From Heptranchias perlo (Eukaryota): 64,000 bases of DNA. This document shows, one piece after another, positions 22,901 to 55,028 of the stretch. Where the stretch lies: assembly GCF_035084215.1 (NCBI RefSeq), contig NC_090340.1, forward strand, positions 5,580,001 through 5,644,000. The letters are read 5' to 3'. Both the position numbers and the translations under genes were made by a program. The notes beneath the pieces are model-generated. The model did no database searches, had not been told where the DNA came from, and saw only the letters and a list, made by a program, of their open reading frames with translations. Every line of letters starts with the position of its first letter. Within the stretch, counting starts at the first letter, position 1.

Positions 22901-23519
22901 CCAATAGTTTATTTAGTGCCCCGGAGATCAGAACGATTTTATAGGCCAAGCCTCATGTCTTAGCGGGCTGATTCTCCAGGTGCGGGGCATCTCACACTGG
23001 CACTGCTTGTCTCCAGTTATTTCTCCATTAAATTTGGAAATTGACTGACGAGCTGTATTGCCAATTTAGTCTTAACCTGGCGTAACTGTAGCTGCAGAGT
23101 TCATAATAAAATGACAAATTTCCATAGTCCATATAATGCCCATAAATTTGTAATAATAACCCGAGGATAAATTCGAAACTCTACACATTTATTACATCTA
23201 TATTCAATTACCTCCTCTACCACAATCTATACGTGCCATTCGATCGGGTAATTTTGACACTATCCAAGAATCTATGGGACTTCCTCCCGTCCAAAATTTT
23301 ACTTGTTACACGAATGAACCCGATTGATAGAACCTTTAGTACTCAAGCGATCCTCTTCAGGTCAACCAAGCAAACATTAAACAGATTCTTCAGAATCAAA
23401 AATAGTAAAGACTTGCAATATTCGTCCTTCGTGGCGGGCGAAGTGACGATGAATTATGAACTTGCGAGCTCATGTATAATTTTAATAAACTCCCCCTACT
23501 TTTGCTGTAACTGCAGCTT

Positions 23520-23645
23520 CCTAGTTCCTGTTACCGGTTCTGATCACAGCTACACCAGCAAATCTTAGTATAAGGGGCATGTCTTTCTTCACTTTGCACC
23601 ACTCCGCAACAAAACAGTAATGTGGTATTTGACGTCACAGATAAT
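23520..23645 (+). promoter_or_regulatory. Candidate proximal promoter with ETS, RUNX, CRE and GATA motifs
   Basis: TTCCTG 23525-30, TGTGGT 23621-26, palindromic TGACGTCA 23630-37 and AGATAA 23639-44, all within ~220 bp upstream of the ATG. Motif matches only. Confidence 0.45.
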
Positions 23646-23744
23646 TATGAAATTATATTAGATACACAGCCGCCCATTCTCCAAATCTTCACCCATTCGG
23701 TTCTCAGTCACAAAGGAATATACACTGTACTTTCAGTGCAGGAT

Positions 23745-23799
23745 ATGTCTATGAGTGTGGCATTTTGGATCATTTGTTCCTTGGGCATTTTGTATCCAG
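23745..23799 (+). CDS. Exon 1: signal peptide
   Basis: ATG at 23745 (alternative 23751), hydrophobic MSMSVAFWIICSLGILYP, donor CAG|GTAGGC, phase 1 as is typical of IgSF leader exons. Confidence 0.8.
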
Positions 23800-26700
23800 G
23801 TAGGCTTCTACTTTTGTTGTTATCAATCAATCTTTCCTGAAAAAGGAACAGCGCATGAAGTCGAAATTACATTTGAGGTACAATTGGATATTGTTTTATG
23901 CTGGTTTAATTTGAAGTAATTTTATCATGTCCCTTGCCAAAGGGAAACATCAAGTTGAGAAAGGTGATGTTATTTATGGTTATTCAATGAGGAAACAATT
24001 TCAACAGATGGAGAATAATTCTCAGAGTTAGGTACATTCAATTATTAATGTATCAATGGATTGGATGGAAAATATTATTTTGGTGCTTCAGATCATCTTC
24101 CCTGTATATGAATTATTTAACCGTGTGGCTTCGTTTGTTGACAGTTACTGTGGACACTTCAGGCAAATTGTATCCGGATATTGTACAAATGAAGGCGCTA
24201 AGAGGTACGAACATTACCTTGAAATGTCCTTTTCCCTTCGATCGCAATTATTCAAACATAAAGGCTCACTGGTGGAGAGAGGGCAGCGCTACCTTGCTGC
24301 AAGAAGACAGTAGAAAACAGTTCCAAATAAAGAAAGGCTGCGCCTATCTTCATCTCCTGAATGTGACTGTCCTAGACAACGGGACGTATCGTTGTGCAAT
24401 TAACAATCAGAAGCAACGTTTTGGAAAAGGAACTCGAGTACAAGTTGTTGTATATGGTAAGTATCAGTGGAACTGGAAACGTGAAGAGTTTAGTTGCTGT
24501 CGATGCTCAAAATGCGTTTGAAATGGAATTCCAATAAGGAAATGCCCTGTGTGTAAAAGAGTACAGCTTTCAACTTGTTTATAACGACACGCGTTCAACA
24601 ATAAGGAAACTTTCCCACTTCCAGAGCCTCTGCAAAATGTGACAACTGACGTATATCTTCAATTGTTATTTAATGTTATGTTCATCAAGGGAAGTAAATC
24701 CAAGGCCGGGAACTAAAATGCTTCTTTCCAATTTTAGCACTAAGTATCCCTATGAAACACGTCGGGGTTATTTGCAATATTATAGGTGTTTAAAGGTCCA
24801 GTGGAAAGAAGAGGACAGAAGAGGAAGATTCCCATTCCCTCATTTAGACGGCGCACTTCCCGCTTCTGCGATCCAGATAAAATTCCTGAATCGGTGGAAC
24901 AGAGGAGACACACACGATAAATCAGGTGTCGTAGTCCAGACCAAGGTTTAAACTGGATCCTTTACGTGCAAATGAAGGAGATGATCTCGATGTAACAACA
25001 GAACGCGTTCTGTACTATTTCAAATGTTTAAGCGCAGCATGGCCATTCGTACACCATAATATTCATAAAAGAGGTCCAACTTTTCAAATAAATGTTCTTA
25101 AATTCAACAGGAATATGTCAGTACTGCTGGGGAGGAAATTGGGTAATACCTGTAGATACAGTGAAGAAAAAATAGGTTGAGTTGCAGTCAGGATAAATAA
25201 TAATTACAGATACAACTACGATGCCCCATCACAAGCATTCGTTAATTAATGAAAACAGAGTGTAGATAAGAGTACAGGCCAAATATTTTGCTTTATCTCT
25301 TTTTGTTCTTTACCATTTAGCTGTTCCCGCTCCGCTGAAGATTGTCACCATAACATCCGAAGGGGCTTCTTCCGCTTTTCTGCGACTCGCGTGCAGAACG
25401 GCTGCGTTTTACCCGAAGGACTTTAACCTCACCTGGCATAAAAATGGTACCAAAATCGTGACTGGAATTAGAACTGAACAAAAGGCAAATACAGAGGGAC
25501 TGTATGAAGTTATTAGCTCCATAGAAGATACACATCCAATTGAGCGCGGCACAATTTACACCTGTCAAGTATATCACGTTTCAAACTCAATTCCAGCAAG
25601 TGCCAGCTACACTGTTGGTAACGATGGTAATATTGTTGCACACGTGGTGCTTGTATCGATTCCTGTGTTTCTTCGCGCAGTAATTGAGTTTCCATCGCAG
25701 ATAGTGGGTAAATACAAGAAAATGCGGGAAGTGTTTCCTGCAGTTGTTTGCATATCATTCTGTCACCTCCGAAGTCTGGGTTTACTCCATCTCCCATCAA
25801 TCGGGTGAAGATTCCCTTTCTGTTGGGTATTGGGATATGATGAGAAATAATTTGGACACAAGCAATTTAGGGAAACGTGGACACCAGTACTCAGCATAGT
25901 TTCCATAATTTATGCTAACTGCCAAATAATTTTGCAATTTCACTCAGACAGGGCACGGTGAGGGATGATGCCGGAAACCGAACCATGCGTCATTGGGATT
26001 GGAATAGTATGTGAGGGTTGGAGGCATGGAGTGGCGGAATTGATGACTTTGACATTCCCGCAGCCATAACGCAATCCAAGGTCATTCCCCGCATCATCAG
26101 ATGCACAGTGCGGAGCCCTCGAAATTGCATTAAATATGGAATACATAGGTTGTTCTTGTGAAAAGATGGAAAAAGACTTCGTGAGAATTTGTTCCGAAAG
26201 GCAATTCTAGCGAATTTGTAAAAATGTCCCATTTTCTTTACGAGTTCGCCCTCAATCAGCAATTGTTATTTAATGTTATGTTTGTCAAGGAAAGTAGATT
26301 CAAGGCTGCGAACTAAAATGCTTCTTTCTAATTTTAGCACTAAGTATCCGTATAAAACATGTTGGGGTTATTTGCAATGTTATAGAAGTTTAAGGGATAT
26401 ATGAAAAGAAGAGGATAAAAGAGGAAGATTCCCATTCCCTCATTTAGAACACGCGCTTCCCGTTTCTGCGATCCAGATAAAACTCCTGAATCGCCTTTCG
26501 GTGAAACAGGCGAGACACACACGATAAATCAGATACCGTAGTCCAGACCGAGGTTCAAACTGGATCCTTTAGGTGCAGATGAACAAAATGTTCTCGAACA
26601 ACAGAACGCGTCCTGCACTATTCCAACTGTTTAGCACAGCATGACGATTCGTACACCATAAAATTAGTATGAAAGAGGCCCAATTTTGGAAATAAATTTT

Positions 26701-29700
26701 GGAAATACATCAGTACTGCTGGGGAGGAAATTGAATAATAGAACACACCCAAAACATATTTAATATTTTCCTACATGTCGCGACCAGATGAATTCTTATC
26801 CCAATGCACTTTACTCCCATCAATTAGTGGAGGATCATTCAGTGTGTTTTTTCCACCTTTTTACGTATTGCTGCTAATTATTCAAACTATGCGTTATTTG
26901 AAACACTTTGTTGCCGATTTCACACAAATCAGATGAATAAAGAGTTGTTGAAATGGACCTGCTGAGGCTTTATGTATTGTATTAGCGTATTCTCATAGGA
27001 CTATCTTTGTAAGAGATGCTTGTGATATTTAAACCGACGTATATTCTTTTTCATTTCCACAGATTCTAATTTTGTTTTGATATCAATCTCATAGATGTTG
27101 CCTCTGCATTCAGTGTTGCTCTGATCGCTGAATGCGCCGGGATTGCAGTGGTAATTCTATTGTTGACCGTTATGATTGTGAAGGGACTTCAATTCATTAC
27201 GTCCAAAGGTATGAAGCATCCCGACTTTCTTGATCATTGACTATCTGTTCGCAAGTTGCAACAAATTCTGTAAATTAGAAATTAACGGTATAATTGATAC
27301 CGAAGCAAATACCTTACACGCAGGCAGAGGCTGTATAACATCAGTCTAACATCATTCGTAGAGGAGCTGCCCAGTTGTACAAACTGTCCGATGGATTGAC
27401 GTGAAAATATTTCTGAACGTTCATCTCCATATCTGTTTGCTTCAACTCAAATATTAGATCATAACACGACGTTAGCAGTCTCGTAGCTAGAGTTTGCTGA
27501 ATTCTATTGAAGTAGGTCTAGATCTCGTGCAGTGAATGTCTTGGGTGCATGAAGTTTACACAGCTTCATCACAAGAGACATAACACAATGGAAGCGCGCG
27601 TTTCTGGAATCCTGGAGATAAAGCGTGATACTTGGGGCCCTATCAGACCCTGCGAACTGAACTAATTGCATTTGATTTCGTGGTTCTGTTGAAACACCGA
27701 AATATTGGGCAATTTTGGCCATTCATTTCCATTTTATTTCCCACCAGGTACAAAGAGAAATCCAGTGAATTCTGCTCGGCATGAAGATCGGGTAACGTCA
27801 CCTTACTTTTCACTCTACTTTGTTTCAAATGGACTGAGATTTTGCACTCAAATGAGACAGCGTTAAGAATGTTTCCTGCTTGGATTTATTCTGTGTGCCT
27901 CGGTGTTCTGTAAAAAAAAAGCAACTTGTGCTAAAAAAGAATATTGTAATATAAAATAACGAACGGAGTGTTTAGAAACTCTCGCACCGATTTTAAATGG
28001 ACAGATATATTGTTCAGTTTAATCTACCTTATTAAAAATTGCCATAATATTTAAAGGACAACTGTAGTATTGAGCATTACAGAACGTTGTTTATTTCTTT
28101 GTGCTAACCAGGTGATAGCATGGAGATGTAAACTCCCAACATTCATCCTTGTTCATCAATTGACAACAGATCTCCATAATAGATTTGGACCATCCGAAAC
28201 AGTCCATTATTGTTACCATACTTCAACTCCGTCTTTCTGCGCTGCTCAAAATCAATCCATGCTGTCTGTTTAGACGGGTAACCTAACCTGCCTTCTCCCA
28301 GGTGACCGAACACAAAGGGTAAATGCCGTGCAGCCAATCTGCGGTTATCTTTCATAAGCTGGTGGCGTCAAACAGTATCATATTAGATGCTGTTCCCGCC
28401 TATAGTTCCCCAAGTGGTGGCGTGGAAGCTGGATCAAGGACAGTTGCTGCTAGAGCGCACATTTCATTATTATTCAGTCTTGGGATCTGGGTTTCGTTGG
28501 CAAGGCTGATATTTATTGCCCATCCCTAGTTATCCTGAAAACGTGGTGGTGGGCCTTCTTCTTGAACCACTTATAGTGGTTTGATAGAAGTTAAGTGGCT
28601 TGCTACGACACTTCAGAGGACAGTTAAGAGTTAACCACATTGTTGCAGATCTGGATTTACTCGTAGGCTAGACCGGGTAAGGACGGCAGGTTTCATTCCC
28701 TAAAGGATATTATAGAACCAGCTGGATTCTAACGACAATTCAACAGCTTCATGGTCACTGTAACTAATACCAGCTTTTTATTTGCAAATATTTTAAACTA
28801 AATTCAAGTTTTCAAACTATTATTTGAATTCAGCTGCTAAGGATTATTAGTCCAGGCCCCTGGATATGGTGGCTGAAGTTGAAAAAAAATATTCTGGAAT
28901 TATGTGTGCTTCACCATTTTAGGAATAATGTGACATCGCTTGCTTACTTCCTTATAAATATCGAGTCAGCATGACATATTTGCTCGACTCAGGGCCATGG
29001 ACCCTCCCCTAAGCGGGCACTGTGCCCCCAGTGACATGCAAATCAATATCCAATTATATGATAATCGCACCAGAGAGCTCGAACAATAAGACCCGTACTC
29101 TGTCTGCGTTGTTTACTGTGATCTGGCACATGCCCACATATGTGTTCCCTTTAGATTTCAAATGATAAGGATTGCGATGAATCCAGGTCAATTATAGACC
29201 AACAAGTTATTTAATTTGATATGACATACCTGAATGATAGAGTCATAGAATCATAGAAAATTTAGGGCACAGAAGGAGGCAATTCGACCTATCGTGTCTG
29301 CACTGGCTGAGAAACGAACCACACACCGTAGCCCCACTTTTCCACATTTGGTCCATAGTCCTGTAAGTCACGGCTCTTCAGGTGCACATCGAGACATTTT
29401 TAAATGAGTTGAGGGTTTCTGCCTTTACCACCCTCTCAGGCAGTGAGTTCCAGACACCCACCACCCTCTGGGTGAAAAAAAAATCCTAATTTCCGCTCTA
29501 ATCCTTCTACCAATCACTTTAAATCTATGCTCTCTGGTTATTCACCCTCCGGTAAGGGAATTATCACCTCTATCTCGGCGCCCCATAATTTTGTACAGGC
29601 CAATCAAATCACCCCTCAGCCTCCTCTGTTCATTGGAAAACAACCCCAGCCTATCCAATCAGTCATCATAGCTAAAATTCTCCAGCCCTGGAAACATCCT

Positions 29701-32700
29701 CGGAAATCTCCTCTGCACCCTCTCTATCGTATCTCGGAGCTGGAGCTGCGGGTGGATTCACTGTGGAGAATACGCGATGCAGAGAAACTCGTGGATAGCA
29801 CGTTTAGCGAGTTGGTCACACCGCAGGTAAAGGGAGTACAGGCAGGAAGTGATGGGTGACCACCAGGCAGAGTAAGAGGTGCAGGCAGGTAGTGCAGGGG
29901 TCCCCTGTGGCCATCCCCCCTCTCAAAGAGGTATACCGTTTTGGATGCTGTTGGGGGAGATGGCTCACCAGGGGAAGGTAACAGCAGCCAGGTTCATGGC
30001 ACCGTGGCTGGCTCTGCTGCACAGGAGGGCAGGAAAAAGGGTGGCAGAGCTAAAGTGATAGGGGACTCGATTGTAAGGGGAATAGACAGGCGTTTCTGCG
30101 GACGCAACCGAGACTCCAGGATGGTATGTTGCCTCCCTGGTGCAAGGGTCAGGGATATCTCGGAGCGGCTGCAGGACATTCTGGAGGGGGAGGGTGAACA
30201 GCCAGTTGTCGTGGTGCATATAGGTGCCAACGATATAGGTAAAAAGCAGGATGAGGTCCTACAAGCTGAATTTAGGGAGTTAGGAGTTAAACTAAAAAGT
30301 AGGACCTCAAAGGTAGTAATCTCAGGATTGCTACCAGTGCCACGGGATAGTCAGAGTAGGAATGACAGGATAGCTAGGATGAATACGTGGCTTGAGAAAT
30401 GGTGCAAGAGGGAGGGATTCAAATTCCTGGGCCATTGGAACCGGTTCTTGGGGAGGTGGGACCAGTACAAATTGGACGGTCTGCATCTGGGCAGGACTGG
30501 AACCAATGTCCTAGGGGGAGTGTTTGTTAGTGCTGTTGGGGAGGGTTTAAACTAATGTGGTAGTGGGATGGGAACCGATGCAGGAAGTCAGTGGGAAGTA
30601 AAGTGGTGACAGAAACAAAAGGCAGTAAGGGAGAGTGTACAAAACATGACCGGACAGATGGTCTGAGAAAGCAGGGCAAAGACCAGGGGAAGTCTAGATT
30701 AAACTGCATTTATTTCAATGCATGAAGTCTGATGGGCAAGGCAGATGAACTCAGGGCATGGATGGGTACATGGGACTGGGATGTTATATCTATTACTGAA
30801 ACATGGCTAAGGGAGGGGCAGGACTGGCAGCTCAATGTTCCAGGGTACAGATGCTATAGGAAAGATAGAGCAGGAGGTAAGAGAGGAGGGGGAGTTGCGT
30901 TCTTGATTAGGGAGAACATCACGGCAGTAGTGAGAGGGGATATATCCGAGGGTTCGCCCACTGAGTCTATATGGGTAGAACTGAAAATAAGAAGGGAGAG
31001 ATCACTTTGATAGGATTGTACTACAGACCCCCAAATAGTCAACGGGAAATTGAGGAGCAAATATGTAAGGAGATTACAGACAGCTGCAAGAAAAATAGGG
31101 TGGTAATAGTAGGGGACTTTAACTTTCCCAACATTGACTGGGACAGCCATAGCATTCGGGGCTTGGATGGAGAGAAATTTGTTGAGTGCATTCAGGAGGA
31201 ATTTCTCATTCAGTATGTGGATGGCCCGACTAGAGAGGGGGCAAAACTTGACCTCCTCTTGGGAAATAAGGAAGGGCAGGTGACAGAAGTGTTAGTGAGG
31301 GATCACTTTGGGACCAGTGATCACAATTCCATTCGTTTTAAGATAGCTATGGAGAATGATAGGTCTGGCCCAAAAGTTAAAATTCTAAATTGGGGAAAAG
31401 CCAATGTTGATGGTATTAGACAGGAACTTTCAGAAGTTGATTGGGAGAGTCCGTTGGCACGCAAAGGGAATCTGGTAAGTGGGAGGCTTTCAAAAGTGTG
31501 TTAACCAGGGTTCAGGGTTCCTTATAAAGTGAAGGGCAAGGCTGGTGGAAGCAGGGAATCTTGGATGACTCGGGAGATTGAGGCCCTATTCAAAAAGAAG
31601 AAGGAGGCATATGACATGCATAGGCAGCTGGGATCAAGTGGATCCCTTGAAGAGTATAGAGATTGCCAGAGTAGAGTTAAGAGAGAAATCAGGAGGGCAA
31701 AAAGAGGACATGAGATTGCTTTGGCAGATAAGGCAAAGGAGAATCCAAAGAGCTTCTACAAATACATAAAGGGCAAAAGAGTAACTAGGGAGAGAGTAGG
31801 GCCTCTTAAGGATCAACAAGGTCATCTATGTGCGGAACCACAAGAGATGGGTGAGATCCGAAATGAATATTTCACATCGGTATTTACGGTTGAGAAAGGC
31901 ATGGATGTTAGGGAACTTGGGGAAATAAATAGTGCTTTCTTGAGGAGTGTACATATTACAGAGAGGGAGGTGCTGGAAGTCTTAACGCGCATCAAGGTAG
32001 ATAAATCTCCGGGACCTGATGAAATGTATCCCAGGACGTTATGGGAGGTTAGGGAGGAAATTGCGGGTCCCCTAGCAGAGATTTTTGAAACATCGACAGC
32101 TACAGGTGAGGTGCCTGAAGATTGGAGGGTAGCAAATGTTGTGCATTTGTTTAAGAAGGGCGGCAGGGAAAAGCCTGGGAACTACAGACCGGTGAGCCTG
32201 ACATCTGTAGTGGGTAAGTTGTTAGAGGTATTCTGAGAGACAGGATCTACAGGCATTTGGAGAGGCAGGGACTGATTCGGAACAGTCAGCATGGTTTTGT
32301 GAGAGGAAAATCATGTCTCACGAATTTGATTGAGTTTTTTGAAGGGGTAACCAAGAAGATAGATGAGGGCTGTGCAGTAGACGTGGTCTACATGTACTTT
32401 AGCAAAGCCTTTGACAAGATACATAAGGTTAAATCTCACTGGATCAAAGGTGAGGTAGCCAATTGGATACAAAATTTGCTTGACGACAGAAGACAGAGGG
32501 TGGTTGTAGAGGGTTGTTTTTCAAACTGGAGGCCTGTGACCACCGGTGTGCCTCAGGGATCGGTGCTGTGTCCGCTATTATTTGTTGTTGATATTAATGA
32601 TTTGGATGAGAATTTAGGAGGCATGGTTATTAAATTTGCAGATGACACCAAGATTGGTGGCATTGTGGACAGTGAAGAAGGTTATCTAGGATTGCAACGG

Positions 32701-35700
32701 GATTTTGATAAATTGGGCCAGTGGGCCGATGAATGGCAGATGGAATTTAATTTAGATAAATGTGAGGTGATGTATTTTGGTAGATCGAATCGGGCCAGGA
32801 CCTACTTCGTTAATGGTTGGGCGTTGGGGAGAGTTATAGAACAAAGAGATCTAGGAGTACAGGTTCATAGCTCCTTGAAAGTGGAATCACAGGTGGATAG
32901 GGTGGTGAAAAAGTCATTCGGCATGCTTGGTTTCATTGGTCAGAACATTGAATACAGGAGTTGGGATGTTTTGTTGAAGTTGTACAAGACATTAGTAAGG
33001 CCACACTTGGAATACTGTGTACAGTTCTGGTCACCCTATTATAGAAAGGATATTATTAAACTAGAAAGAGTGCAGAAAAGATTTACTAGGATGCTACCGG
33101 GGCTTGATGGTTTGACTTATAGGGAGAGGTTAGATAGACTGGGACTTTTTTCCCTGGAGAGTAGGAGGTTAAGGGGTGATCTTGTAGTAGTCTATAAAAC
33201 AATGAGGGGCATAGATAAGTTAGATAGTCAAAATCTTTTCCCAAAGGTAGGGGAGTCTATAATGAGGGGGCATAGATTAAAGGTGAGAGGGGAGAGATAC
33301 AAAAGGGTCCAGAGGGGCAATTTTTTCACTCAAAGGGTGGTGAGTGTCTGGAACGAGCTGCCAGAGGCAGTAGTAGAGGCGGGTACAATGTTGTCTTTTA
33401 AAAAGCATTTGGAGAGTTACATGGGTAAGATGGGTATAGAGGGATATGGGCCAAGTGCAGGCAATTGAGACTAGCTTCGTGGTATAAACTGGGCGACATG
33501 GATATGTTGGGCCGAAGGGCCTGTTTCCATGTTGTAAACTTCTATGACTCTATGACTCTATGAATCTAGTGCAATTACATCTTTCCTGTAATGTGGTGAC
33601 CAGAACTGTGCGCAGTCCTCAAGCTGTGGCCTCACTAGTGTTTTATACAGTTCCAGCATAACATCCCTGCTTTTATATTCTATGTTTTGGCTAATAAAGG
33701 AAAGCATTCCATATGCCTTCTTAACCACCTTATCTACCTGTCCTACTTCTTTCAGGGATCTGTGGACATGCACTCCAAGGTCCCGCGCTTCCTCTACAAC
33801 TCTCAGTATCCTCCCATTCACTGTGTACTCCCTTGCCTCGCTTGCTTTCCCTAAATGCGTCACCTGCACTTCATCCATTTGCCACTTTTCTTCCCATCTG
33901 ACCCTTCCATTGATATCTTCCTGCAGTCTACAGTTTTCCTCCTCACTATCAAGCACACGGCCTATCTTTTTGTCATCCGCAAATTTCTTAATCATGTCCC
34001 CTATGTTTAAGTACAATTCGTTAATGTATACCACGAAAAACAAAGGACCTATTGCCGAGCCCCGCTGCACCCCACTGGAAACAGCTTTCCAGTCGCAAAA
34101 ATACCCGTCCACCATTACACTTTGCTTCCTGCCACTGACCCAATTTTAGATCCAATTTACCTCATTCCCTTGGATCCCATGGACCTTTACTAATGATTAT
34201 GTTTATTACAGCGAGATTGACCAAGTTTCTATCACTACTCCTATATTATGAAATGAAGAACCATTGTATGGGCCGAAGGTCTGCAATTTCCTTTCATAGA
34301 CGCAACGCGGAAGTTAGACCCGAAAACGTGCACAATCCCGTGCTCATCCTGCAAATGTTGTGAGGCTCTAATTTACTGTCAATCTCATTTGAATGCGCTC
34401 CACCCTAAAATCGGAGTAAATCACCTTTAACAATCGGGGCCCAAACAAAGCACCGAGCTGGCACGATATATTCCTTCTTCAAGTAAAAAAAGTTAAGGTT
34501 TCGACTCATTCATCCATCAAAAGTACGTCATTGTACGTAAAGCGTTTTGGGACGTCCTGCGATCCTGAAAGGCGCTATACAATGCAAAAACACCCTTTAT
34601 TGATGAACGTTAAGCAGTATGTTTCGCTACCTGCAATCGGGGAAACTTTTCAAGTTTTAAGGCGACTTCTATTTATGCCATAAAAATCCATGAAAAGAAA
34701 CATCGAACAGAGTGCCGGTCGCAGTATGAATTAAAACGCTCGGAAATTTGCAATAAATCACTGGAAAAATGACTTTGTTTCCGACTGAGCCTCAACAACA
34801 GGTAGTAATTTTAAGACAGCCCCTGGGAAAGGGCAACTGCAGGAAACTTGCGTATTAGTCCCTGTCAACTGGGATTGGGGCCATATTTATGGTCGGAGAT
34901 TTGCTCAGTGGGAGGTATTAATAGACAGTCGTAAAAAATCGAGGAGATGTCGTAGTTAGGCATATAACTTACTTTTGCCCAAAATACTGCGATCTTTTAA
35001 GCAAGTAATTGGTTTGCAACAAGGTGACGTATGTCTCTCGGCATCAAGTATAGAGGCAAATGTAACTTCGACAGAAACCTGTGAGAAATGGCGTAAACGG
35101 CCTTTATGCGCATCTTCCACGCAAATTACATCAATTCCAGCCCTACTCTCATTACTCCGCTGTAGCACTCTGATCATGTGTCAGAAGGACGTGCATTAAA
35201 GCACTACTCCAGAAGCTGATCCAACAATGTAAGTTGACGTTCACGTGCAGTACTCGGGGAGCCTTGCATTGTCCCATTGCCAGATGAGACGAAAAACCAA
35301 GGCTTCCAATATGTGCACTTAAAAGATACCAGCACAATATTTCAAAAACAGCAGGCGAGTTCTCCGGATATACTGGCCCAACAATGATACTTTAGCCAAC
35401 ACCAACAATACAGATTAACGAATCATTTATTACACTATTATTTGCATATCCATGCTGTGCATGCATTGGATGCCATATTCCGCTGCATAGAAACAGTATT
35501 TATGTTCTAGAAATAATTAATTTCCTATGAAACGCTTCGGGACTTCCAGACATCCACATTATCTGGACGCCTCTCTGTAAATACATTTTCTTCTTCCTCC
35601 GACGCCCCACACTTCGCCGAGGATTAATTTGTACAGCTGCCAATCGAAACGATCAGATTCCCCTGATTTTGGGGTGCATGTGTATTTAACTGATTATCTC

Positions 35701-36731
35701 TGTAAGAATTTATTTATTTGTTTCTTTACTCTCGTTTATTTATTAATGTTTTGATTGAACTCTCATACGGGAGCGACTACATTGATTCGTCCAGTTGTTG
35801 CACCCTACAACCTAAACTAAGGACGAAACTATTGATATATGTGCCTCAATTTATTTCTTTCTATTTTTCATCCCGAAAAAGGCAAAAAGAATTCCACTTG
35901 TTTTACATATATTTATAATGTAATTTAACACCAAATTTCAACTTGAACGATTGACTATAAACCAAACTACATTCTGAATTTATTCCACTATTGTAATGAA
36001 GGAGGATGTCATTTATCTGAATAACAAAAAACAATTAATTCGCACTGACGCGTAAAACTCATGTTCCTGGAAATTTAATAGTTGCCAAAGTTCCTGGCTA
36101 ACTTTCAAAATTGAAATTCATTCGTTTCCCAGCTGTTTACCATTTTCTAATCCAGCGGTTCGGGGTTATTGATCCCTGGCGAGCGTTAAACTGCAGAAAG
36201 AAATAGTAAACTTCATTAACATCTACAGAACTAATAATAAGGTCAATGCGACTATGCTGCCTGAATTGTCTATTAGATGCAAAGGCTTCATGAATCTTGA
36301 AACTCCAGAAAAAGCACCTCAATGAATGCTAAACATTGACTTTCCAGAAAGAACGAGGGTCAGCTGAGGAGAAGCTGACGTACGCTGCTCTGGATCTGAT
36401 CGGTTCCAAGAAAACTATCAATTCGAGGCAACATGAAGAGCGTACAGTGTATGCAAAGGTACAGTTGAGTTCACACAGGGAAATAATAATCATGCAAAAT
36501 AGAATATATTTGGTTTTGAGATGATATTGAGAATTAATTTGACTTCATTTTGATTTAAATTTTTTGAAGAAAATGACATTATTCTTAATTTTTGTTTTAC
36601 AGACCAAACAGGTCGCGGCTGATAGTCAATTGACTTACGCTGCTTTGAATTTGACTGGTTCCAAGAAAACGTCGAAACGTAAACAGAAAGAAACAAACCT
36701 AACATACGCAGTCGTGAAGACCAGCATCTAA
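23745..36731 (+). CDS. Spliced gene (7 coding exons) for a SIRP-alpha-like (PTPNS1-like) inhibitory IgSF receptor: SP-V(J)-C1-TM-4xTyr tail, 344-347 aa
   Basis: Exons 23745-23799, 24145-24456, 25321-25617/25626, 27095-27208, 28302-28318, 36348-36458, 36603-36731. All are GT-AG, with phases 1,1,1,1,0,0 giving one open frame: MSMSVAFWIICSLGILYP|VTVDTSGKLYPDIVQMKALRGTNITLKCPFPFDRNYSNIKAHWWREG...DNGTYRCAINNQKQRFGKGTRVQVVVY|AVPAPLK...LRLACRTAAFYPKDFNLTWHKNG...YTCQVYHVSNSIPASASYTV(GND)|DVASAFSVALIAECAGIAVVILLLTVMIVKGLQFITSK|GDRTQR|KERGSAEEKLTYAALDLIGSKKTINSRQHEERTVYAK|TKQVAADSQLTYAALNLTGSKKTSKRKQKETNLTYAVVKTSI*. Orthology to SIRPA is not demonstrated. Confidence 0.85.
24145..24456 (+). CDS. Exon 2: V-set Ig domain with germline-joined J-like G strand
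   Basis: Acceptor tttgttgacAG (in-frame alternative start at 24163). B-strand ITLKC, C-strand HWWR, DNGTYRC, FGKGTRVQV. Donor ATG|GTAAGT, phase 1-1. Confidence 0.93.
24661..25147 (+). repeat. Intronic direct repeat copy 1 (intron 2)
   Basis: Begins aattgttatttaatgttatgtt and ends cagtactgctggggaggaaattg; matches 26261-26738 (period ~1600 bp). Confidence 0.9.
25321..25626 (+). CDS. Exon 3: C1-set Ig domain
   Basis: Long polypyrimidine acceptor ending ccatttAG at 25320. C1 hallmarks LxC...FYP...LTW.KNG and YTCQVYH. Two in-phase donors (after 25617 or 25626). Confidence 0.92.
26261..26738 (+). repeat. Intronic direct repeat copy 2 (intron 3)
   Basis: Diverged ~480 bp copy of 24661-25147; the pair brackets the C1 exon. 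Confidence 0.9.
27095..27208 (+). CDS. Exon 4: transmembrane exon
   Basis: atctcatAG acceptor, FSVALIAECAGIAVVILLLTVMIV followed by K, donor AAG|GTATGA, 114 nt, phase 1-1. Confidence 0.85.
28302..28318 (+). CDS. Exon 5: putative 17-nt cytoplasmic micro-exon (GDRTQR)
   Basis: CTAAC branch-like motif at ~28283, ccttctcccAG acceptor, AGG|GTAAAT donor. Converts phase 1 to the phase 0 required by exon 6. Other small exons in the 8 kb intron cannot be excluded. Confidence 0.6.
28470..28870 (-). mobile_element. tRNA-derived SINE-like repeat
   Basis: Reverse complement matches the SINE-like head/body at 57210-57540 (ggcctggactaataatcc, ccttacccggtctagcctac). Confidence 0.7.
29240..29726 (-). mobile_element. 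Host CR1, 3' part (antisense)
   Basis: tcatagaatcatagaa tail and RT C-terminal coding sequence on the minus strand; continues at 33565. Confidence 0.85.
29727..33564 (+). mobile_element. Long CR1 LINE (ORF1 SGNH esterase + ORF2 APE endonuclease/RT), frameshifted, nested in an antisense CR1 within intron 5
   Basis: GDSIVRG/HIGANDI/DGLHL (29941-30555); ITETWL, VGDFNFP, SDHN (30732-31504); KSPGPD, YRPVSLTS, GVPQGSVL, FADD (31529-33468); (TCTATGAC)n tail; host interrupted at ctctgcaccctctcta|...|tctagtgcaattacatc. Confidence 0.95.
33565..34190 (-). mobile_element. Host CR1, RT part (antisense)
   Basis: ORF 33558..34115 with GVQRGSAIGPLFF, FADD, RPQLED.AQFWSP. Confidence 0.9.
35150..35560 (+). 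mobile_element. Degraded DeuSINE-like element
   Basis: Reverse-orientation similarity to 43640-44070. Confidence 0.55.
36348..36458 (+). CDS. Exon 6: cytoplasmic, ITIM LTYAAL plus ITSM-like TVYAK(T/V)
   Basis: gactttccAG acceptor, 111 nt, phase 0-0, donor AAG|GTACAG. Lies inside ORF 36336..36524. Confidence 0.85.
36603..36731 (+). CDS. Exon 7: terminal cytoplasmic exon with ITIMs LTYAAL and LTYAVV
   Basis: tttgttttacAG acceptor; TKQVAADSQLTYAALNLTGSKKTSKRKQKETNLTYAVVKTSI then TAA at 36729-36731. Too short for the ORF track. Confidence 0.87.
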   Translation, partial: TKQVAADSQLTYAALNLTGSKKTSKRKQKETNLTYAVVKTSI

Positions 36732-37332
36732 TTGAGGCAATCACGGATACCTTGCAAAGATTCGAGGGATGTTTCAGTCATACGTTTACGTTGCTTGTGC
36801 ATTTAATCCAACGACTGGCCTATCTGCAGCTTTCCCTTCTTTTCCAAAGTCCTGGAACGCATTGTTGCCTCCCACCATTCTTTATTGCACACTCTCCATT
36901 CCGACTGCTAACTCACGCACTGTGTGTCTCTCAAAGTCACAACTGACTTCTTTGTAAATGTCAACACTGTGCATCACTTTTGCCCTCTCCATCAAGGAAG
37001 CCCTGAGCCATTCCATTAATCTCCATTATTTATATCGACAGTCCGATTCCATGATATACTTTCTCGTGAATCCGCTTGTACCGTGAAACAAGGGCATCAA
37101 TTTATATCCATTTAAATATTACCCTTTCTGCAGTTTACGCGTTTTTTCTATTTGGGATGCCTCTTGAAGCACCAACTGTTCACGAGTTATTTGCTTGTAT
37201 AATGTCTTTAATTTCTGAATCTTTCATTCGATTTTCTAACAAATGAATTGTCATTTAATTCCATTTTCATTCCACCTATAAGTCGTCTCTATTTATATTC
37301 CCCTCACACTCATTTCCCTTTGGCCAGATTCT

Positions 37333-37338
37333 ATTAAA
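37333..37338 (+). terminator. Candidate polyadenylation signal ATTAAA
   Basis: ~600 nt after the stop codon and followed by T-rich sequence. Confidence 0.3.
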
Positions 37339-37499
37339 ATGTTTCATTTTTCATTTTTGTATTCAGAAGAGGAACCAAGTCCCATAAGTTAAACTGTCTT
37401 GTTGTCGACATAGTCGATGGCTGGTTCATGTGTTTCCTGCTTTTATTGTGTGACCTTTGTCCAGAATTAGAAGGGTTTTTTTGCAATTATTATTATTAT

Positions 37500-52233: not shown

Positions 52234-52320
52234 TTTAAAATAAAATTGCTGGACTATAACTTGGTGTTGTAAAATTGTTTACAATTGTCAACCCCAGTCC
52301 ATCACCGGCATCTCCACATC

Positions 52321-55028
52321 ATGACTACCATCGACACCACAAACTGCCGGCTCACAGTGGAAAGGATATCCAAGAAGATCGCGCATTTAGACACAGACAT
52401 CAAGTTTTTACAGAGCTGCAAGAAAGCAGACAAGATCCCGAAAGGACTCCAGATCACGAACCCACTCAAGTCCACATACAACTCGGATTACGCTGAGAGA
52501 CTCTGCCGCCGTACCTCTCGCACACTCCGCAACCATCTCATACACCAACTCTACAGCAGACGCCACAACCTCGAAACCAAGATAGAGTCCATACTCTCAA
52601 CCTGTACTCAGGACACAGCAGACCAGCTACGTTATACCGCCAAACAGACGAGGCAACGGAACTACGCTGCCTACATGAAAACCAAGAGCAGGAAGCTTGA
52701 GAAACTCGGCATCACCACCAGCAACGACCAAGCTTCCCCTGGTACCACGGTTGCAACCACAGGGAAGTCTATTGTCAATTTATCCGACCACACCCTTCAA
52801 CCAGACAAAATCAAAGTTCTCAGCCGAGGGCTCAATTTCTGCCCCACTACCAAAATGGACCCCACTAGTCTCGCGGCGGACACAGAGGAATTCATCAGGA
52901 GAATGAGGCTCCGGGAATTCTACCACAAACCCCAAGATTTCAGCAGCGAACCCAATGAGACAATCGACGATCCGGAACAGCAGACAGAGGGATCCGCGGT
53001 ACAGCAACCGAAGAGGAAAGAGTCAAACTGGACTCCTCCGGAGGGTCGCTGCCCTCAGCTGGACATGTATGCTCAAGCTGTCAGGAAATGCGTCAATGCC
53101 AGATTCATCAGCCGCACTCAGAAGACAGTCCAGAATGTCACCCGAGCACAACGCAACGCCATCAACGCTCTCAAGACCAACCGCAACATCGTCATCAAAC
53201 CAGCGGACAAAGGAGGAGCCATAGTCATACAGAACAGAACAGACTATTGCAAAGAAGCATACCGACAACTGGACAACCAGGAACACTACAGACGGTTACC
53301 CGCAGATCCGAACAAAGAACACACCCACCAGCTCAACAAACTGATCAAGACCTTCGATCCAGACCTTCAAAGCATCCTACGCATTCTCATCCCACGTAAT
53401 CCCCGCGTGGGAGACTTCTACTGCCTCCCAAAGATACACAAAGCCAACACACCCGGACGTCCCATCGTATCAGGCAACGGAACCCTGTGTGAGAACCTCT
53501 CTGGATACATCGAGGGCATCCTGAAACCCATCGTACAGGGAACCCCCAGCTTCTGTCGCGACACTACAGACTTCCTACAAAAACTCAGTACCCACGGACC
53601 AGTTGAACCAGGAACACTTCTCACCACGATGGACGTCTCGGCACTATACACCAGTATCCCCCACGATGACGGTATCGCTGCGACAGCATCAATACTCAAC
53701 ACCAACAACAGCCAATCTCCGGAAGCCATCCTACAACTCATCCGCTTCATCCTGGATCACAATGTCTTCACCTTCGATAACCAGTTCTTTACCCAAACAC
53801 ACGGAACAGCCATGGGGACCAAATTCGCACCCCAATACGCCAACATTTTCATGCACAAGTTCGAGCAGGACTTCTTCACTGCACAAGACCTCCAACCAAC
53901 ACTATACACCAGATACATCGACGACATTTTCTTTCTATGGACCCACGGCAAGGAATCACTAAAGAGACTACACGATAACATCAACAAGTTCCATCCCACC
54001 ATCAAGCTCACCATGGACTACTCCTCAGAATCAGTTTCTTTCTTGGACACACGAATCTCCATCAAAGACGGGCACCTCAGCACCTCACTCTACCGCAAGC
54101 CCACGGACAACCTCACGATGCTCCACTTTTCCAGCTTCCACCCTAACCACGTCAAAGAGGCCATCCCCTATGGACTGGCCCTGCGAATACACAGGGTCTG
54201 CTCAGACAAGGAGGAACGCGATGGACACCTACAGACGCTGAAAGACGCCCTAGTAAGAACGGGATATGACGCTCGACTCATCGATCGACAGTTCCGACGG
54301 GCCACAGCAAAAAATCGCATAGACCTCCTCAGGAGACTAACACGGGACGCAACCAACAGAGTACCCTTTGTCGTCCAGTACTTCCCCGGAGCGGAGAAAC
54401 TACGCCATGTTCTCCGCAGCCTTCAACATGTCATCAATGAGGACAAACACCTCGCTATGGCCATCCCCACACCACCACTACTCGCCTTTAAACAGCCACC
54501 CAACCTCAAACAGACCATCGTTCGCAGCAAACTACCTAGCTTTCAAGAGAACAGCGTCCACGACGCCACACAACCCTGCCACGGTAACCTCTGCAAGACA
54601 TGCCAGATCATCGACACAGATACCACCATCACACGAGATGACACCACCCACCAGGTGCATGGTTCATACTCCTGTGACTCGGCCAACGTTGTCTACCTCA
54701 TACGTTGCAGGAAAGGATGCCCCAGAGCATGGTACATTGGCGAGACCATGCAGACGCTGCGACAACGGATGAACGGACACCGCGCAACAATCGCCAAACA
54801 GGAGGGTTCCCTCCCAGTCGGGGAACACTTCAGCAGTCATGGACATTCATCCACCGACCTTCGGGTAAGCGTACTCCAAGGCGGCCTTCGAGACACACGA
54901 AACGCAAAATCGTCGAGCAGAAATTGATAGCCAAGTTCCGCACCCATGAGGACGGCCTCAACCGGGATCTTGGGTTCATGTCACGCTACACGTTACCCCA
55001 CCAGCGAACAAATGTTATCTGTTTTTAA
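52321..55028 (+). CDS. Penelope RT/GIY-YIG endonuclease polyprotein with one frameshift near the C-terminus (~54901)
   Basis: KPADKG, LPKIHK, GRPIVS, GTAMG, RYIDD; Cys linker PCHGNLCKTC; VVY...WYIGET...RMNGH; HFSSHGH. The main frame stops at 54927 and the conserved tail RKIVEQKLIAKFRTHEDGLN continues in the frame ending 55028. Confidence 0.92.

What the first reader, a model, noticed from the sequence alone, without database searches (positions are those of the whole stretch)
23745..36731. Non-rearranging VJ-C1 inhibitory receptor with a SIRP-alpha-like four-tyrosine tail
Seen: an intact spliced frame with a V exon already containing a J-type FGxGT strand, one C1-set exon, a TM exon and four cytoplasmic Tyr motifs, with no RSS beside the V exon. 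Known: C1-set domains are largely confined to Ig/TCR/MHC/B2M/tapasin/SIRP-type proteins; SIRP-alpha is V-C1-C1 with four tyrosines that recruit SHP-1/2, and its first motif (ITYADLNLPKGKK, from memory) resembles LTYAALDLIGSKK here. Inference: a cartilaginous-fish SIRP-like self-recognition or NK/myeloid receptor whose V-C1 ectodomain mirrors a single TCR/IgL chain, so it bears on what antigen-receptor precursors looked like. I cannot tell whether the family is already described.
Basis: partly seen in the sequence, partly recalled or inferred. Interest (0 to 1): 0.85.

Follow-up and report, generated by a model that had tools for sequence, protein, structure and literature searches.

The report
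Shark SIRP-like inhibitory V-C1 receptor gene
This is an intact gene for a ready-joined, antibody-like surface receptor with an inhibitory tail, one of many copies of a shark, ray and chimaera gene family that databases predict under inconsistent names and that I found described in no searchable paper.

Summary
Window 23745-36731 (+) carries an open seven-exon gene: leader, V exon ending in a J-like FGKGT strand, one C1-set exon, TM exon, a 44-nt exon the finding does not list, and two duplicated tail exons. All six introns are GT-AG; the product is 356 aa. No RSS lies beside the V exon.

It belongs to a large family. Every family member I found is from a cartilaginous fish, under automatic names such as SIRP-alpha-like, tapasin-like, Ig-lambda-like or B7-H6-like. 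Its subfamily holds both ITIM-tailed members and short-tailed members with an arginine in the TM.

The tail is SIRP-alpha-like: tyrosine spacing 23-14-23 against 24-17-24, and 31 bits against at most 8 in 500 shuffles. The ectodomain is no closer to SIRP than to Ig light chains, and it has one C1 domain, not two.

The scan has found this family before on other DNA of this genome. Ten searches found no paper describing it.

The parts
23745..23799 (+). Exon 1: start codon and signal peptide (MSMSVAFWIICSLGILYP), phase 1 out
   Evidence: Sequence and gtaggc donor. Aligns with the leaders of P0003 and P0161.
24145..24456 (+). Exon 2: V(J) domain, 312 nt, phase 1-1. Cys...Trp...DxGxYxC plus a J-like FGKGTRVQVVVY G strand in the same exon. 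55 residues between the cysteines.
   Evidence: Pfam V-set 4.6e-10. 65% identity to P0174 and P0161. No RSS. Representative search: 394 proteins with E up to 0.001.
25321..25626 (+). Exon 3: C1-set domain, 306 nt, phase 1-1 (FYPKDFNLTWHKNG ... YTCQVYH)
   Evidence: Pfam C1-set 5.7e-11. Solved-structure matches are Ig constant domains, UrIg2 and MHC I alpha3. 79% identity to P0165.
27095..27208 (+). Exon 4: stalk and transmembrane segment (..ALIAECAGIAVVILLLTVMIVKGLQFITSK), phase 1-1. A Glu and the family's conserved Cys sit at the outer edge.
   Evidence: Hydropathy scan, sequence. Aligns with the TM of P0003 and P0161.
27748..27791 (+). Exon 5: 44-nt cytoplasmic exon (GTKRNPVNSARHEDR), phase 1 in, phase 0 out. 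Needed to keep the frame; not listed in the finding.
   Evidence: tblastn with P0003, ag|..|gt sites. Aligns to KRTSLNTSQHADR of P0003.
36348..36458 (+). Exon 6 (cyt1): LTYAAL (ITIM) and TVYAK|, tyrosines at exon residues 12 and 35
   Evidence: Paralogous to exon 7 (tblastn E 6e-8; DNA alignment).
36603..36731 (+). Exon 7 (cyt2): LTYAAL (ITIM) and LTYAVV (ITIM), tyrosines again at exon residues 12 and 35, then TAA stop at 36729-36731
   Evidence: First AATAAA/ATTAAA after the stop is at 37333.

Best explanation
An intact, germline-joined (non-rearranging) gene for a 356-aa type I membrane receptor: signal peptide, one compact V domain with a J-like G strand, one C1-set domain, a TM segment, and a tail made of two duplicated two-tyrosine exons. 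It is an inhibitory-type member of a large multigene family whose members I found only in cartilaginous fishes. The family has paired forms: ITIM-tailed members, and short-tailed members with an arginine in the TM.

Inferred mechanism (not shown): the V domain binds an unknown cell-surface or pathogen ligand. Src-family kinases then phosphorylate the ITIM tyrosines. These sit 23 residues from a second tyrosine, as in SIRP-alpha, and would recruit tandem-SH2 phosphatases (SHP-1/SHP-2). That would damp signals from activating receptors, including the family's own arginine-TM members, which share 62-79% ectodomain identity with this gene.

Shown: gene structure, domain types, family membership and tail architecture. 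Inferred: expression, ligand, phosphatase recruitment and cell type.
For: - Seven open exons, six GT-AG introns, 1071 nt including the stop.
- Pfam V-set and C1-set above cut-off.
- 28 of 30 columns conserved in at least 88% of 17 family proteins are kept. The 2 changes are conservative: L to V and L to I.
- All seven exon translations align collinearly with full-length RefSeq models P0003 and P0161.
- V and C1 trees both place the window in the same 14-row clade (SH-aLRT 100 and 95). By my script's rough motif rule this clade holds 6 ITIM-tailed and 7 arginine-TM short-tailed members from sharks and rays.
- Tail: 3 canonical ITIMs; spacing 23-14-23, shared by 5 of the 13 family tails tabulated (a sixth repeats the same unit, 23-14-23-14-23-14-23) and close to SIRP-alpha's 24-17-24.
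- Tail profile scores 31.3 bits on SIRP-alpha against at most 8.2 in 500 shuffles.
- No activating-type TM exon is hidden in the window.
Against: - No transcript evidence. No RNA run was listed as holding the stretch, and the three runs laid gave 0 contigs.
- Two gene-specific oddities: a Glu where close paralogues have Gly at the outer TM edge, and an extra Cys (KKGCAY) in the V domain.
- An 8.6-kb intron with a same-strand LINE separates the tail exons from the rest.
- The second tyrosine motif (TVYAKT) fits no canonical SH2 motif.
- Phosphatase binding and the ligand are pure inference from motifs.
Confidence: 0.75

Rival explanations
1. It is a true SIRP orthologue or co-orthologue: the cartilaginous-fish SIRP family, binding CD47 as a 'self' signal on myeloid cells.
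For: RefSeq names many members SIRP-alpha-, beta- or gamma-like. A rodent SIRP-alpha is the best hit outside the cartilaginous fishes in the word-limited searches (1.5e-11; 1.9e-30). Tail architecture and spacing match. SIRPs also come as paired inhibitory and activating forms (recalled knowledge).
Against: There is one C1 exon, not two. SIRP-alpha D1-D2 scores 59.2 bits against the family profile, below Ig light chains at 66-81 bits. SIRP is absent from the best 60 matches of the V exon, the C1 exon and the V-only profile. In my trees the SIRP-alpha domains sit on very long branches outside the family, though they were set as outgroup. Automatic names are mutually contradictory. Earlier scan notes (unchecked) report V-C1-C1-C1 genes on other pieces that could be the real SIRP counterparts.
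Confidence: 0.12
2. It is a recently silenced or never-expressed copy: a structurally intact pseudogene in a fast-turnover cluster.
For: No RNA support. Earlier follow-up notes report damaged copies elsewhere in the cluster (unchecked). There is a Glu at the TM edge, an extra Cys in V, and a long LINE-bearing intron.
Against: All 7 exons are open and all 12 splice sites canonical. 28 of 30 conserved columns are kept. Both tail exons keep their tyrosines in register.
Confidence: 0.1
3. It is a B7/butyrophilin-type V-C ligand (counter-structure), not a receptor of the SIRP or antigen-receptor kind.
For: The V-only profile's best single-domain solved matches are PD-L1 V domains (7e-10). CD276 is among the hits of the V exon and of the family profile. 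Some members are named NCR3-ligand-1-like. Atlas structure neighbours include ICOS ligand, CD276, CD80 and HHLA2.
Against: The conserved GxGT J-like strand is not a B7 feature (recalled). The C domain scores far better as C1-set (5.7e-11) than as the butyrophilin or CD80 C-set models (8e-4 and 0.014). The multi-ITIM tail and the arginine-TM partners are the signature of paired receptors.
Confidence: 0.05

Closest known systems
SIRP-alpha (SHPS-1 / PTPNS1) and the SIRP paired-receptor family
   Same: V domain with a J-like strand followed by a C1-set domain. Type I TM protein. Four-tyrosine tail built as two ITIM-plus-second-tyrosine units with near-identical spacing (23-14-23 against 24-17-24). 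Tail profile 31.3 bits. Inhibitory and arginine-TM forms both occur in the family. Hatherley et al. 2009 (PMC2785349, passages read) already argued that V-C1 SIRPs relate to antigen-receptor precursors.
   Different: One C1 domain instead of two. A compact V domain with 55 residues between its cysteines. The ectodomain is no closer to SIRP than to Ig light chains. A very large tandem expansion. The second motif is TVYAxT, not xEYASI. CD47 binding is unknown.
Ig light chain / TCR chain (V-J-C1)
   Same: V-J-C1 order and phase 1 exons. The family profile aligns over the whole V+C of light chains at 66-81 bits. There is a conserved Cys just outside the membrane; I recall such a position from TCR chains.
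   Different: V and J are one exon and there is no RSS. The V domain is about 12 residues shorter than a lambda V between Trp and the second Cys, 7 of them at C'-C''/CDR2 (alignment). It has an ITIM tail of its own.
UrIg / UrIg2 (non-rearranging shark VJ-C1 Ig-like genes; PMC12227049 abstract and passages, PMC10751288 passages)
   Same: Non-rearranging VJ exon followed by C1, in cartilaginous fishes. The UrIg2 structure 9dmx is among the top matches of the C1 exon (1.1e-11) and of the family profile (1.7e-31).
   Different: UrIg2 is V-C1-C2-C3, an antibody-like dimer (PMC12227049). Here there is a single C1, a TM segment and an ITIM tail, in a multigene family. Neither paper mentions ITIM or SIRP.
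Teleost novel immune-type receptors (NITR)
   Same: Non-rearranging V domains with a J-like motif and an ITIM tail. Paired forms are recalled, not tested. Carp NITR13 matches the family profile at 7.7e-13, and its tail LSYAAL...SVYNQI scores 15.7 bits.
   Different: NITR13 has two V-type domains and no C1. It is from a bony fish.
NKp30 (NCR3)
   Same: A non-rearranging VJ-type domain. PMC10751288 and PMC12227049 name it as the other non-rearranging, MHC-linked VJ gene.
   Different: NKp30 is not in the best 60 matches of the V exon or the V-only profile. It has no C1 domain and no ITIM tail (recalled, not tested). Earlier scan notes that mention the MHC all lie on other pieces of this genome (unchecked).

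Membership tests
Cartilaginous-fish V(J)-C1 paired receptor family (RefSeq 'SIRP-alpha-like' etc.) | V exon homologous over its full length to family V domains | tested here: met
   P0002 5.2e-34 (65%) and P0003 2.1e-31 over query residues 2-103. 65% identity to P0174 and P0161. Clade of 14 rows with SH-aLRT 100.
Cartilaginous-fish V(J)-C1 paired receptor family (RefSeq 'SIRP-alpha-like' etc.) | Single C1-set exon homologous to family C1 domains | tested here: met
   79% identity to P0165 and 74% to P0174. The same 14-row clade, SH-aLRT 95.
Cartilaginous-fish V(J)-C1 paired receptor family (RefSeq 'SIRP-alpha-like' etc.) | Inhibitory-type tail: xTYAxL - 23 - TVYAxT - 14 - LTYAxL - 23 - xxYAxV | tested here: met
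   Window spacing is 23-14-23. The same pattern is in P0162, P0163, P0079, P0071 and P0175, and P0161 repeats the unit.
Cartilaginous-fish V(J)-C1 paired receptor family (RefSeq 'SIRP-alpha-like' etc.) | Conserved residues of the family kept | tested here: met
   28 of 30 columns conserved in at least 88% of 17 proteins are kept; the 2 changes are conservative.
SIRP family | V-C1-C1 ectodomain (three Ig domains) | tested here: not met
   Only one C1 exon. tblastn of 12 family proteins and of the C1 exon finds no second C1 in the window.
SIRP family | Ectodomain closer to SIRP than to other V-C1 proteins | tested here: not met
   SIRP-alpha D1-D2 scores 59.2 bits against 66-81 bits for Ig light chains. 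SIRP is absent from the best 60 matches.
SIRP family | Four-tyrosine ITIM tail that recruits SHP-1/2 | tested here: met
   The motif architecture is met. Phosphatase binding itself cannot be tested here.
SIRP family | Conserved synteny with the tetrapod SIRP region; orthology by phylogeny | not testable with these tools
No Ig, TCR, MHC, tapasin or B7 sequence sets could be fetched: the last protein search returned nothing.
SIRP family | CD47 binding by the V domain | not testable with these tools
Rearranging antigen receptors (Ig/TCR) | Separate V and J segments flanked by RSS | tested here: not met
   The J-like strand is inside the V exon, which ends in a splice donor. There are 0 RSS-like sites on the + strand.
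C1-set Ig domain | Match to the C1-set model above its curated cut-off, better than to C2- or I-set models | tested here: met
   C1-set 43 bits (cut-off 21), E 5.7e-11. C2-set_3 8e-4 and C2-set_2 0.014, both below their cut-offs.
NITR (teleost) | V (or V plus a second V/I-type domain) without C1; bony fish | tested here: not met
   A C1 domain is present. The family came only from cartilaginous fishes.
NKp30 | Single V-type domain closely matching NKp30 | tested here: not met
   NKp30 is not in the best 60 matches of the V exon or the V-only profile. A C1 exon is present.

The most novel reading that the evidence does not exclude
The family is a surviving lineage of the pre-RAG V(J)-C1 receptor, the kind of gene from which both SIRPs (by C1 duplication) and rearranging Ig/TCR chains (by RAG invasion of the VJ exon) descend. 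It would work as a disulfide-linked, TCR-like dimer through the conserved Cys at the membrane edge, with paired C1 domains. It would signal through its own ITIM tail or, in the arginine-TM forms, through an adaptor. In that case the original antigen-receptor-like molecule was an innate paired inhibitory/activating receptor.
Probability: 0.12. Interest if true: 0.8.

Novelty: new variant of a known kind. Interest (0 to 1): 0.45.

Why it matters
C1-set domains are almost confined to Ig, TCR, MHC, beta2-microglobulin, tapasin and SIRP (PMC2785349). Non-rearranging VJ-C1 genes in sharks are currently being used to reconstruct how antigen receptors arose (UrIg and UrIg2; PMC10751288, PMC12227049).

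This gene belongs to a large, paired inhibitory/activating V(J)-C1 family that I found in sharks, rays and a chimaera. It combines an Ig-light-chain-like V-C1 unit with a SIRP-alpha-type tail. That gives a concrete, testable candidate link between SIRPs and antigen receptors.

The family also shows that RefSeq's automatic names for it, roughly ten different and mutually contradictory ones, are unreliable.

This single gene adds one intact inhibitory member and a clean exon map. The family itself was already met several times in this scan.

Tried and rejected
**Transcript evidence.** The look-up of sequencing runs listed no RNA holder; 3 runs came from the same sample with share 0.00. Read laying on 23700-27900 with X1-X3 laid 0 contigs. 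Expression therefore stays open.

**Synteny and species.** Earlier scan notes that mention the MHC all lie on other pieces (unchecked).

**Outgroups for a proper domain tree.** The last homologous-protein run, with the C1 exon alone, gave 1 candidate and 0 hits. The trees therefore have only SIRP-alpha and NITR13 as outgroups, on long branches. They say nothing about Ig, TCR, MHC, tapasin or B7. Of the 50 proteins that passed the V-plus-C1 filter, I left out 10 near-duplicate cluster members (P0004, P0151, P0152, P0154-P0160).

**Rejected ideas.**
- A hidden activating-type TM exon: tblastn of 9 C-termini gave nothing better than chance.
- A direct TM-to-cyt1 splice at the first AG: it runs into a stop.
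- An RSS beside V.
- An RNA family in 23000-37500: 0 Rfam matches.
- A canonical ITSM at the second tyrosine: only intron read-through would give TVYAKV.

**Atlas.** The two atlas searches gave only generic IgSF neighbours.

**Literature.** Ten searches found no paper on this family. Four likely relevant Flajnik/Ohta papers were not held (PMC3709836, PMC6761025, PMC4594805, PMC10530332). They, and the supplements (closed, not opened), may describe it.

**Joined model.** I did not build, type, search or look up the joined protein. So I could not check whether this exact gene is already a RefSeq model.

Full report
**1. What is there**

On the + strand between 23745 and 36731 I find seven exons, each open in its phase:
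- leader, 23745-23799
- V, 24145-24456
- C1, 25321-25626
- stalk and TM, 27095-27208
- a 44-nt cytoplasmic exon, 27748-27791
- two tail exons, 36348-36458 and 36603-36731, ending in TAA

All six introns begin GT and end AG. The exons sum to 1071 nt, which is 356 codons plus the stop.

The 44-nt exon is not in the finding's text. The TM exon leaves in phase 1 and the first tail exon enters in phase 0, so a direct splice at the first AG runs into a stop. I found the exon with tblastn of homologue P0003. It has ag|..|gt borders, and its product aligns with the same segment in 14 of the 17 whole family proteins of alignment A1.

**2. More than chance**

- The V exon scores V-set E 4.6e-10 and the C1 exon C1-set E 5.7e-11, both above Pfam's cut-offs.
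- Against solved structures the C1 exon matches Ig constant domains, UrIg2 and MHC class I alpha3.
- The V exon ends RFGKGTRVQVVVY and is followed directly by a splice donor, so V and J are germline-joined.
- A scan for heptamer, 12/23 spacer and nonamer found none on the + strand of the whole window. It found two weak sites on the - strand far from the V exon.
- Of 30 alignment columns conserved in at least 88% of 17 family proteins, the window keeps 28. The two changes are L to V and L to I.

**3. The family**

The V exon alone, scored against 1.84 billion representative proteins, gave 394 proteins at E up to 0.001. Its best full-length single-domain matches were P0002 (65%), P0003 (58%), P0004 and P0010.

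- All 20 clusters whose sources I looked up are from cartilaginous fishes. They cover sharks of five orders, rays and the chimaera Callorhinchus.
- In the word-limited searches, 17 of 18 hits and 23 of 26 hits are cartilaginous fish. The others are a rodent SIRP-alpha, a frog Ig-like protein and a carp NITR13.
- RefSeq's automatic names contradict each other. They include SIRP-alpha-, beta- and gamma-like, NCR3-ligand-1-like, tapasin-related-like, Ig lambda-like, TCR beta-like, MHC class II beta-like, CDON-like and 'uncharacterized'.
- The nearest proteins I hold are Heptranchias perlo P0165 (C1 79%, V 62%) and P0174 (C1 74%, V 65%), and Heterodontus francisci P0161 (C1 70%, V 65%).

Maximum-likelihood trees of the V domains (44 rows) and the C1 domains (43 rows) put the window in the same 14-row clade, with SH-aLRT 100 and 95. 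By my script's rough motif rule, that clade holds six members with ITIM tails and seven with a short tail and an arginine in the TM, from both sharks and rays. It is therefore a paired inhibitory/activating family, and this gene is an inhibitory member. No activating-type TM exon is hidden in the window.

**4. The tail**

The two tail exons are duplicates (tblastn E 6e-8; DNA alignment). Both carry tyrosines at exon residues 12 and 35.

After splicing the motifs are LTYAAL, TVYAKT, LTYAAL and LTYAVV. Three are canonical ITIMs. The second has an ITSM-like Thr at -2 but Thr at +3. Only read-through of the donor would give TVYAKV, followed by a stop.

Tyrosine spacing is 23-14-23:
- The same pattern occurs in 5 of the 13 family tails I tabulated, from sharks and the chimaera, and P0161 repeats the unit. 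Most of the other tails contain parts of it.
- Rodent SIRP-alpha has ITYADL, TEYASI, LTYADL and SEYASV at 24-17-24.

A profile of the tails alone (the 13 of 18 rows of A2 with tails of at least 60 aa) scores:
- 31.3 bits on the SIRP-alpha tail
- 15.7 bits on a carp NITR tail
- at most 8.2 bits on 500 shuffles of the SIRP-alpha tail

**5. The ectodomain is not specifically SIRP-like**

| Comparison with the family profile | Score |
|---|---|
| SIRP-alpha D1-D2 | 59.2 bits |
| SIRP-alpha D3 + TM + tail | 64.6 bits |
| Light-chain V-C units inside larger chains | 66.4 and 69.0 bits |
| Stand-alone light chains | 75.6-81.4 bits |
| UrIg2 (three matched stretches) | E 1.7e-31 |

- SIRP and NKp30 are absent from the best 60 solved-structure matches of the V exon, the C1 exon and a V-only family profile.
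- That V-only profile is nearest to I-set domains (titin, contactins, DCC). Among single-domain chains it is nearest to the PD-L1 V domain (7e-10).
- The V domain has only 55 residues between its cysteines. In the printed alignment it lacks about 12 residues of a lambda V domain, seven of them at C'-C''.

The domain is best described as a compact V/I-type domain that keeps a J-like GxGT strand. The key Gly of that strand is conserved in at least 90% of 34 aligned rows.

**6. Mechanism**

Shown: the gene structure, the domain types, family membership and the tail architecture.

Inferred from established ITIM biology: ligand binding by the V domain, then tyrosine phosphorylation, then recruitment of tandem-SH2 phosphatases. 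This would oppose the arginine-TM paralogues, which presumably use an acidic-TM adaptor.

A Cys conserved at the membrane edge in most ITIM-type members raises the possibility of a covalent dimer. C1-set domains are otherwise always found paired (PMC2785349, passage read).

**7. What I could not show**

- Expression. No RNA run was listed, and the three runs laid gave nothing.
- A domain phylogeny with Ig, TCR, MHC, tapasin and B7. No such sequences could be fetched.

**8. Earlier notes of this scan**

Searches list the same family many times on this piece, from about 2.85 Mb before the window to about 9.7 Mb beyond it, and on other pieces. They include a paralogue ending about 2 kb before the window and another starting just after it. 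Follow-up agents there reached the same reading: a SIRP-like paired VJ-C1 family, sevengill shark, no paper found. I treat these as leads. My family assignment, tail analysis and literature searches are my own.

**9. Literature**

Ten full-text searches found no description of a cartilaginous-fish V-C1 ITIM family.

- The papers on non-rearranging shark VJ-C1 genes concern UrIg and UrIg2 (PMC10751288, passages; PMC12227049, abstract and passages). They do not contain the words SIRP or ITIM.
- Hatherley et al. 2009 (PMC2785349, passages) set out the idea that V-C1 SIRPs relate to antigen-receptor precursors. They state that no SIRP genes were known in organisms predating adaptive immunity.
- Four likely relevant papers were not held and supplements were closed. 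The claim 'not in print' is therefore limited to what I could search.

**10. Verdict**

This is a real, apparently intact inhibitory member of a large family of non-rearranging V(J)-C1 paired receptors that I found only in cartilaginous fishes. It works like a SIRP-alpha-type inhibitory receptor. It fails two defining tests of SIRP membership: the number of C1 domains, and ectodomain affinity.

It is a new variant of a known kind. The family is of moderate interest for the origin of antigen receptors. This single locus adds an exon-exact model and the tail-spacing comparison.

Noticed in passing
window 24655-25063 and 26255-26665: Two direct copies (84% identity over about 410 nt) of an unclassified element lie in introns 2 and 3 and bracket the C1 exon. 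There are no other copies in the 64 kb. Unequal recombination between them could delete or duplicate the C1 exon. That would fit the V-only and multi-C1 relatives reported in the family.
   Followed up: partly
window 29941-33468 (+) and 33558-34115 (-): Intron 5 (8.6 kb) holds a degraded LINE on the gene's own strand, with a GDSL-esterase-like ORF, an endonuclease and a reverse transcriptase (Pfam 2e-13, 6e-14, 2e-16). An ORF on the opposite strand lies next to it; it gave no Pfam match but its sequence resembles the reverse-transcriptase ORFs listed.
   Followed up: partly
window 36458-36540: Read-through of the cyt1 donor would change the spliced TVYAK|T into TVYAKV, a canonical ITSM, and stop 21 codons later. 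That would give a two-tyrosine ITIM+ITSM tail.
   Followed up: partly
window 24330-24345 and 27125-27135: There are two gene-specific residues. An extra Cys in the V domain (KKGCAY, where 15 of the 17 aligned family proteins have Gly at the preceding position and none has Cys here). A Glu before the conserved membrane-edge Cys (IAECAG, where close paralogues have Gly; P0113 also has E-C).
   Followed up: no
window 52285-54927 (+): An uninterrupted 880-aa ORF with a reverse-transcriptase domain (RVT_1, 3.2e-10). It is a possibly young retroelement of another type than the CR1-like fragments that fill much of the window.
   Followed up: no
database proteins P0002/P0161 (Heterodontus francisci): RefSeq isoform X4 (P0002) of the closest inhibitory homologue skips the C1 domain in frame. 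P0161 carries the two-exon tail unit twice, giving eight motif tyrosines at 23-14-23-14-23-14-23. C1 skipping is also frame-neutral in the window gene, because the exon is phase 1-1.
   Followed up: no
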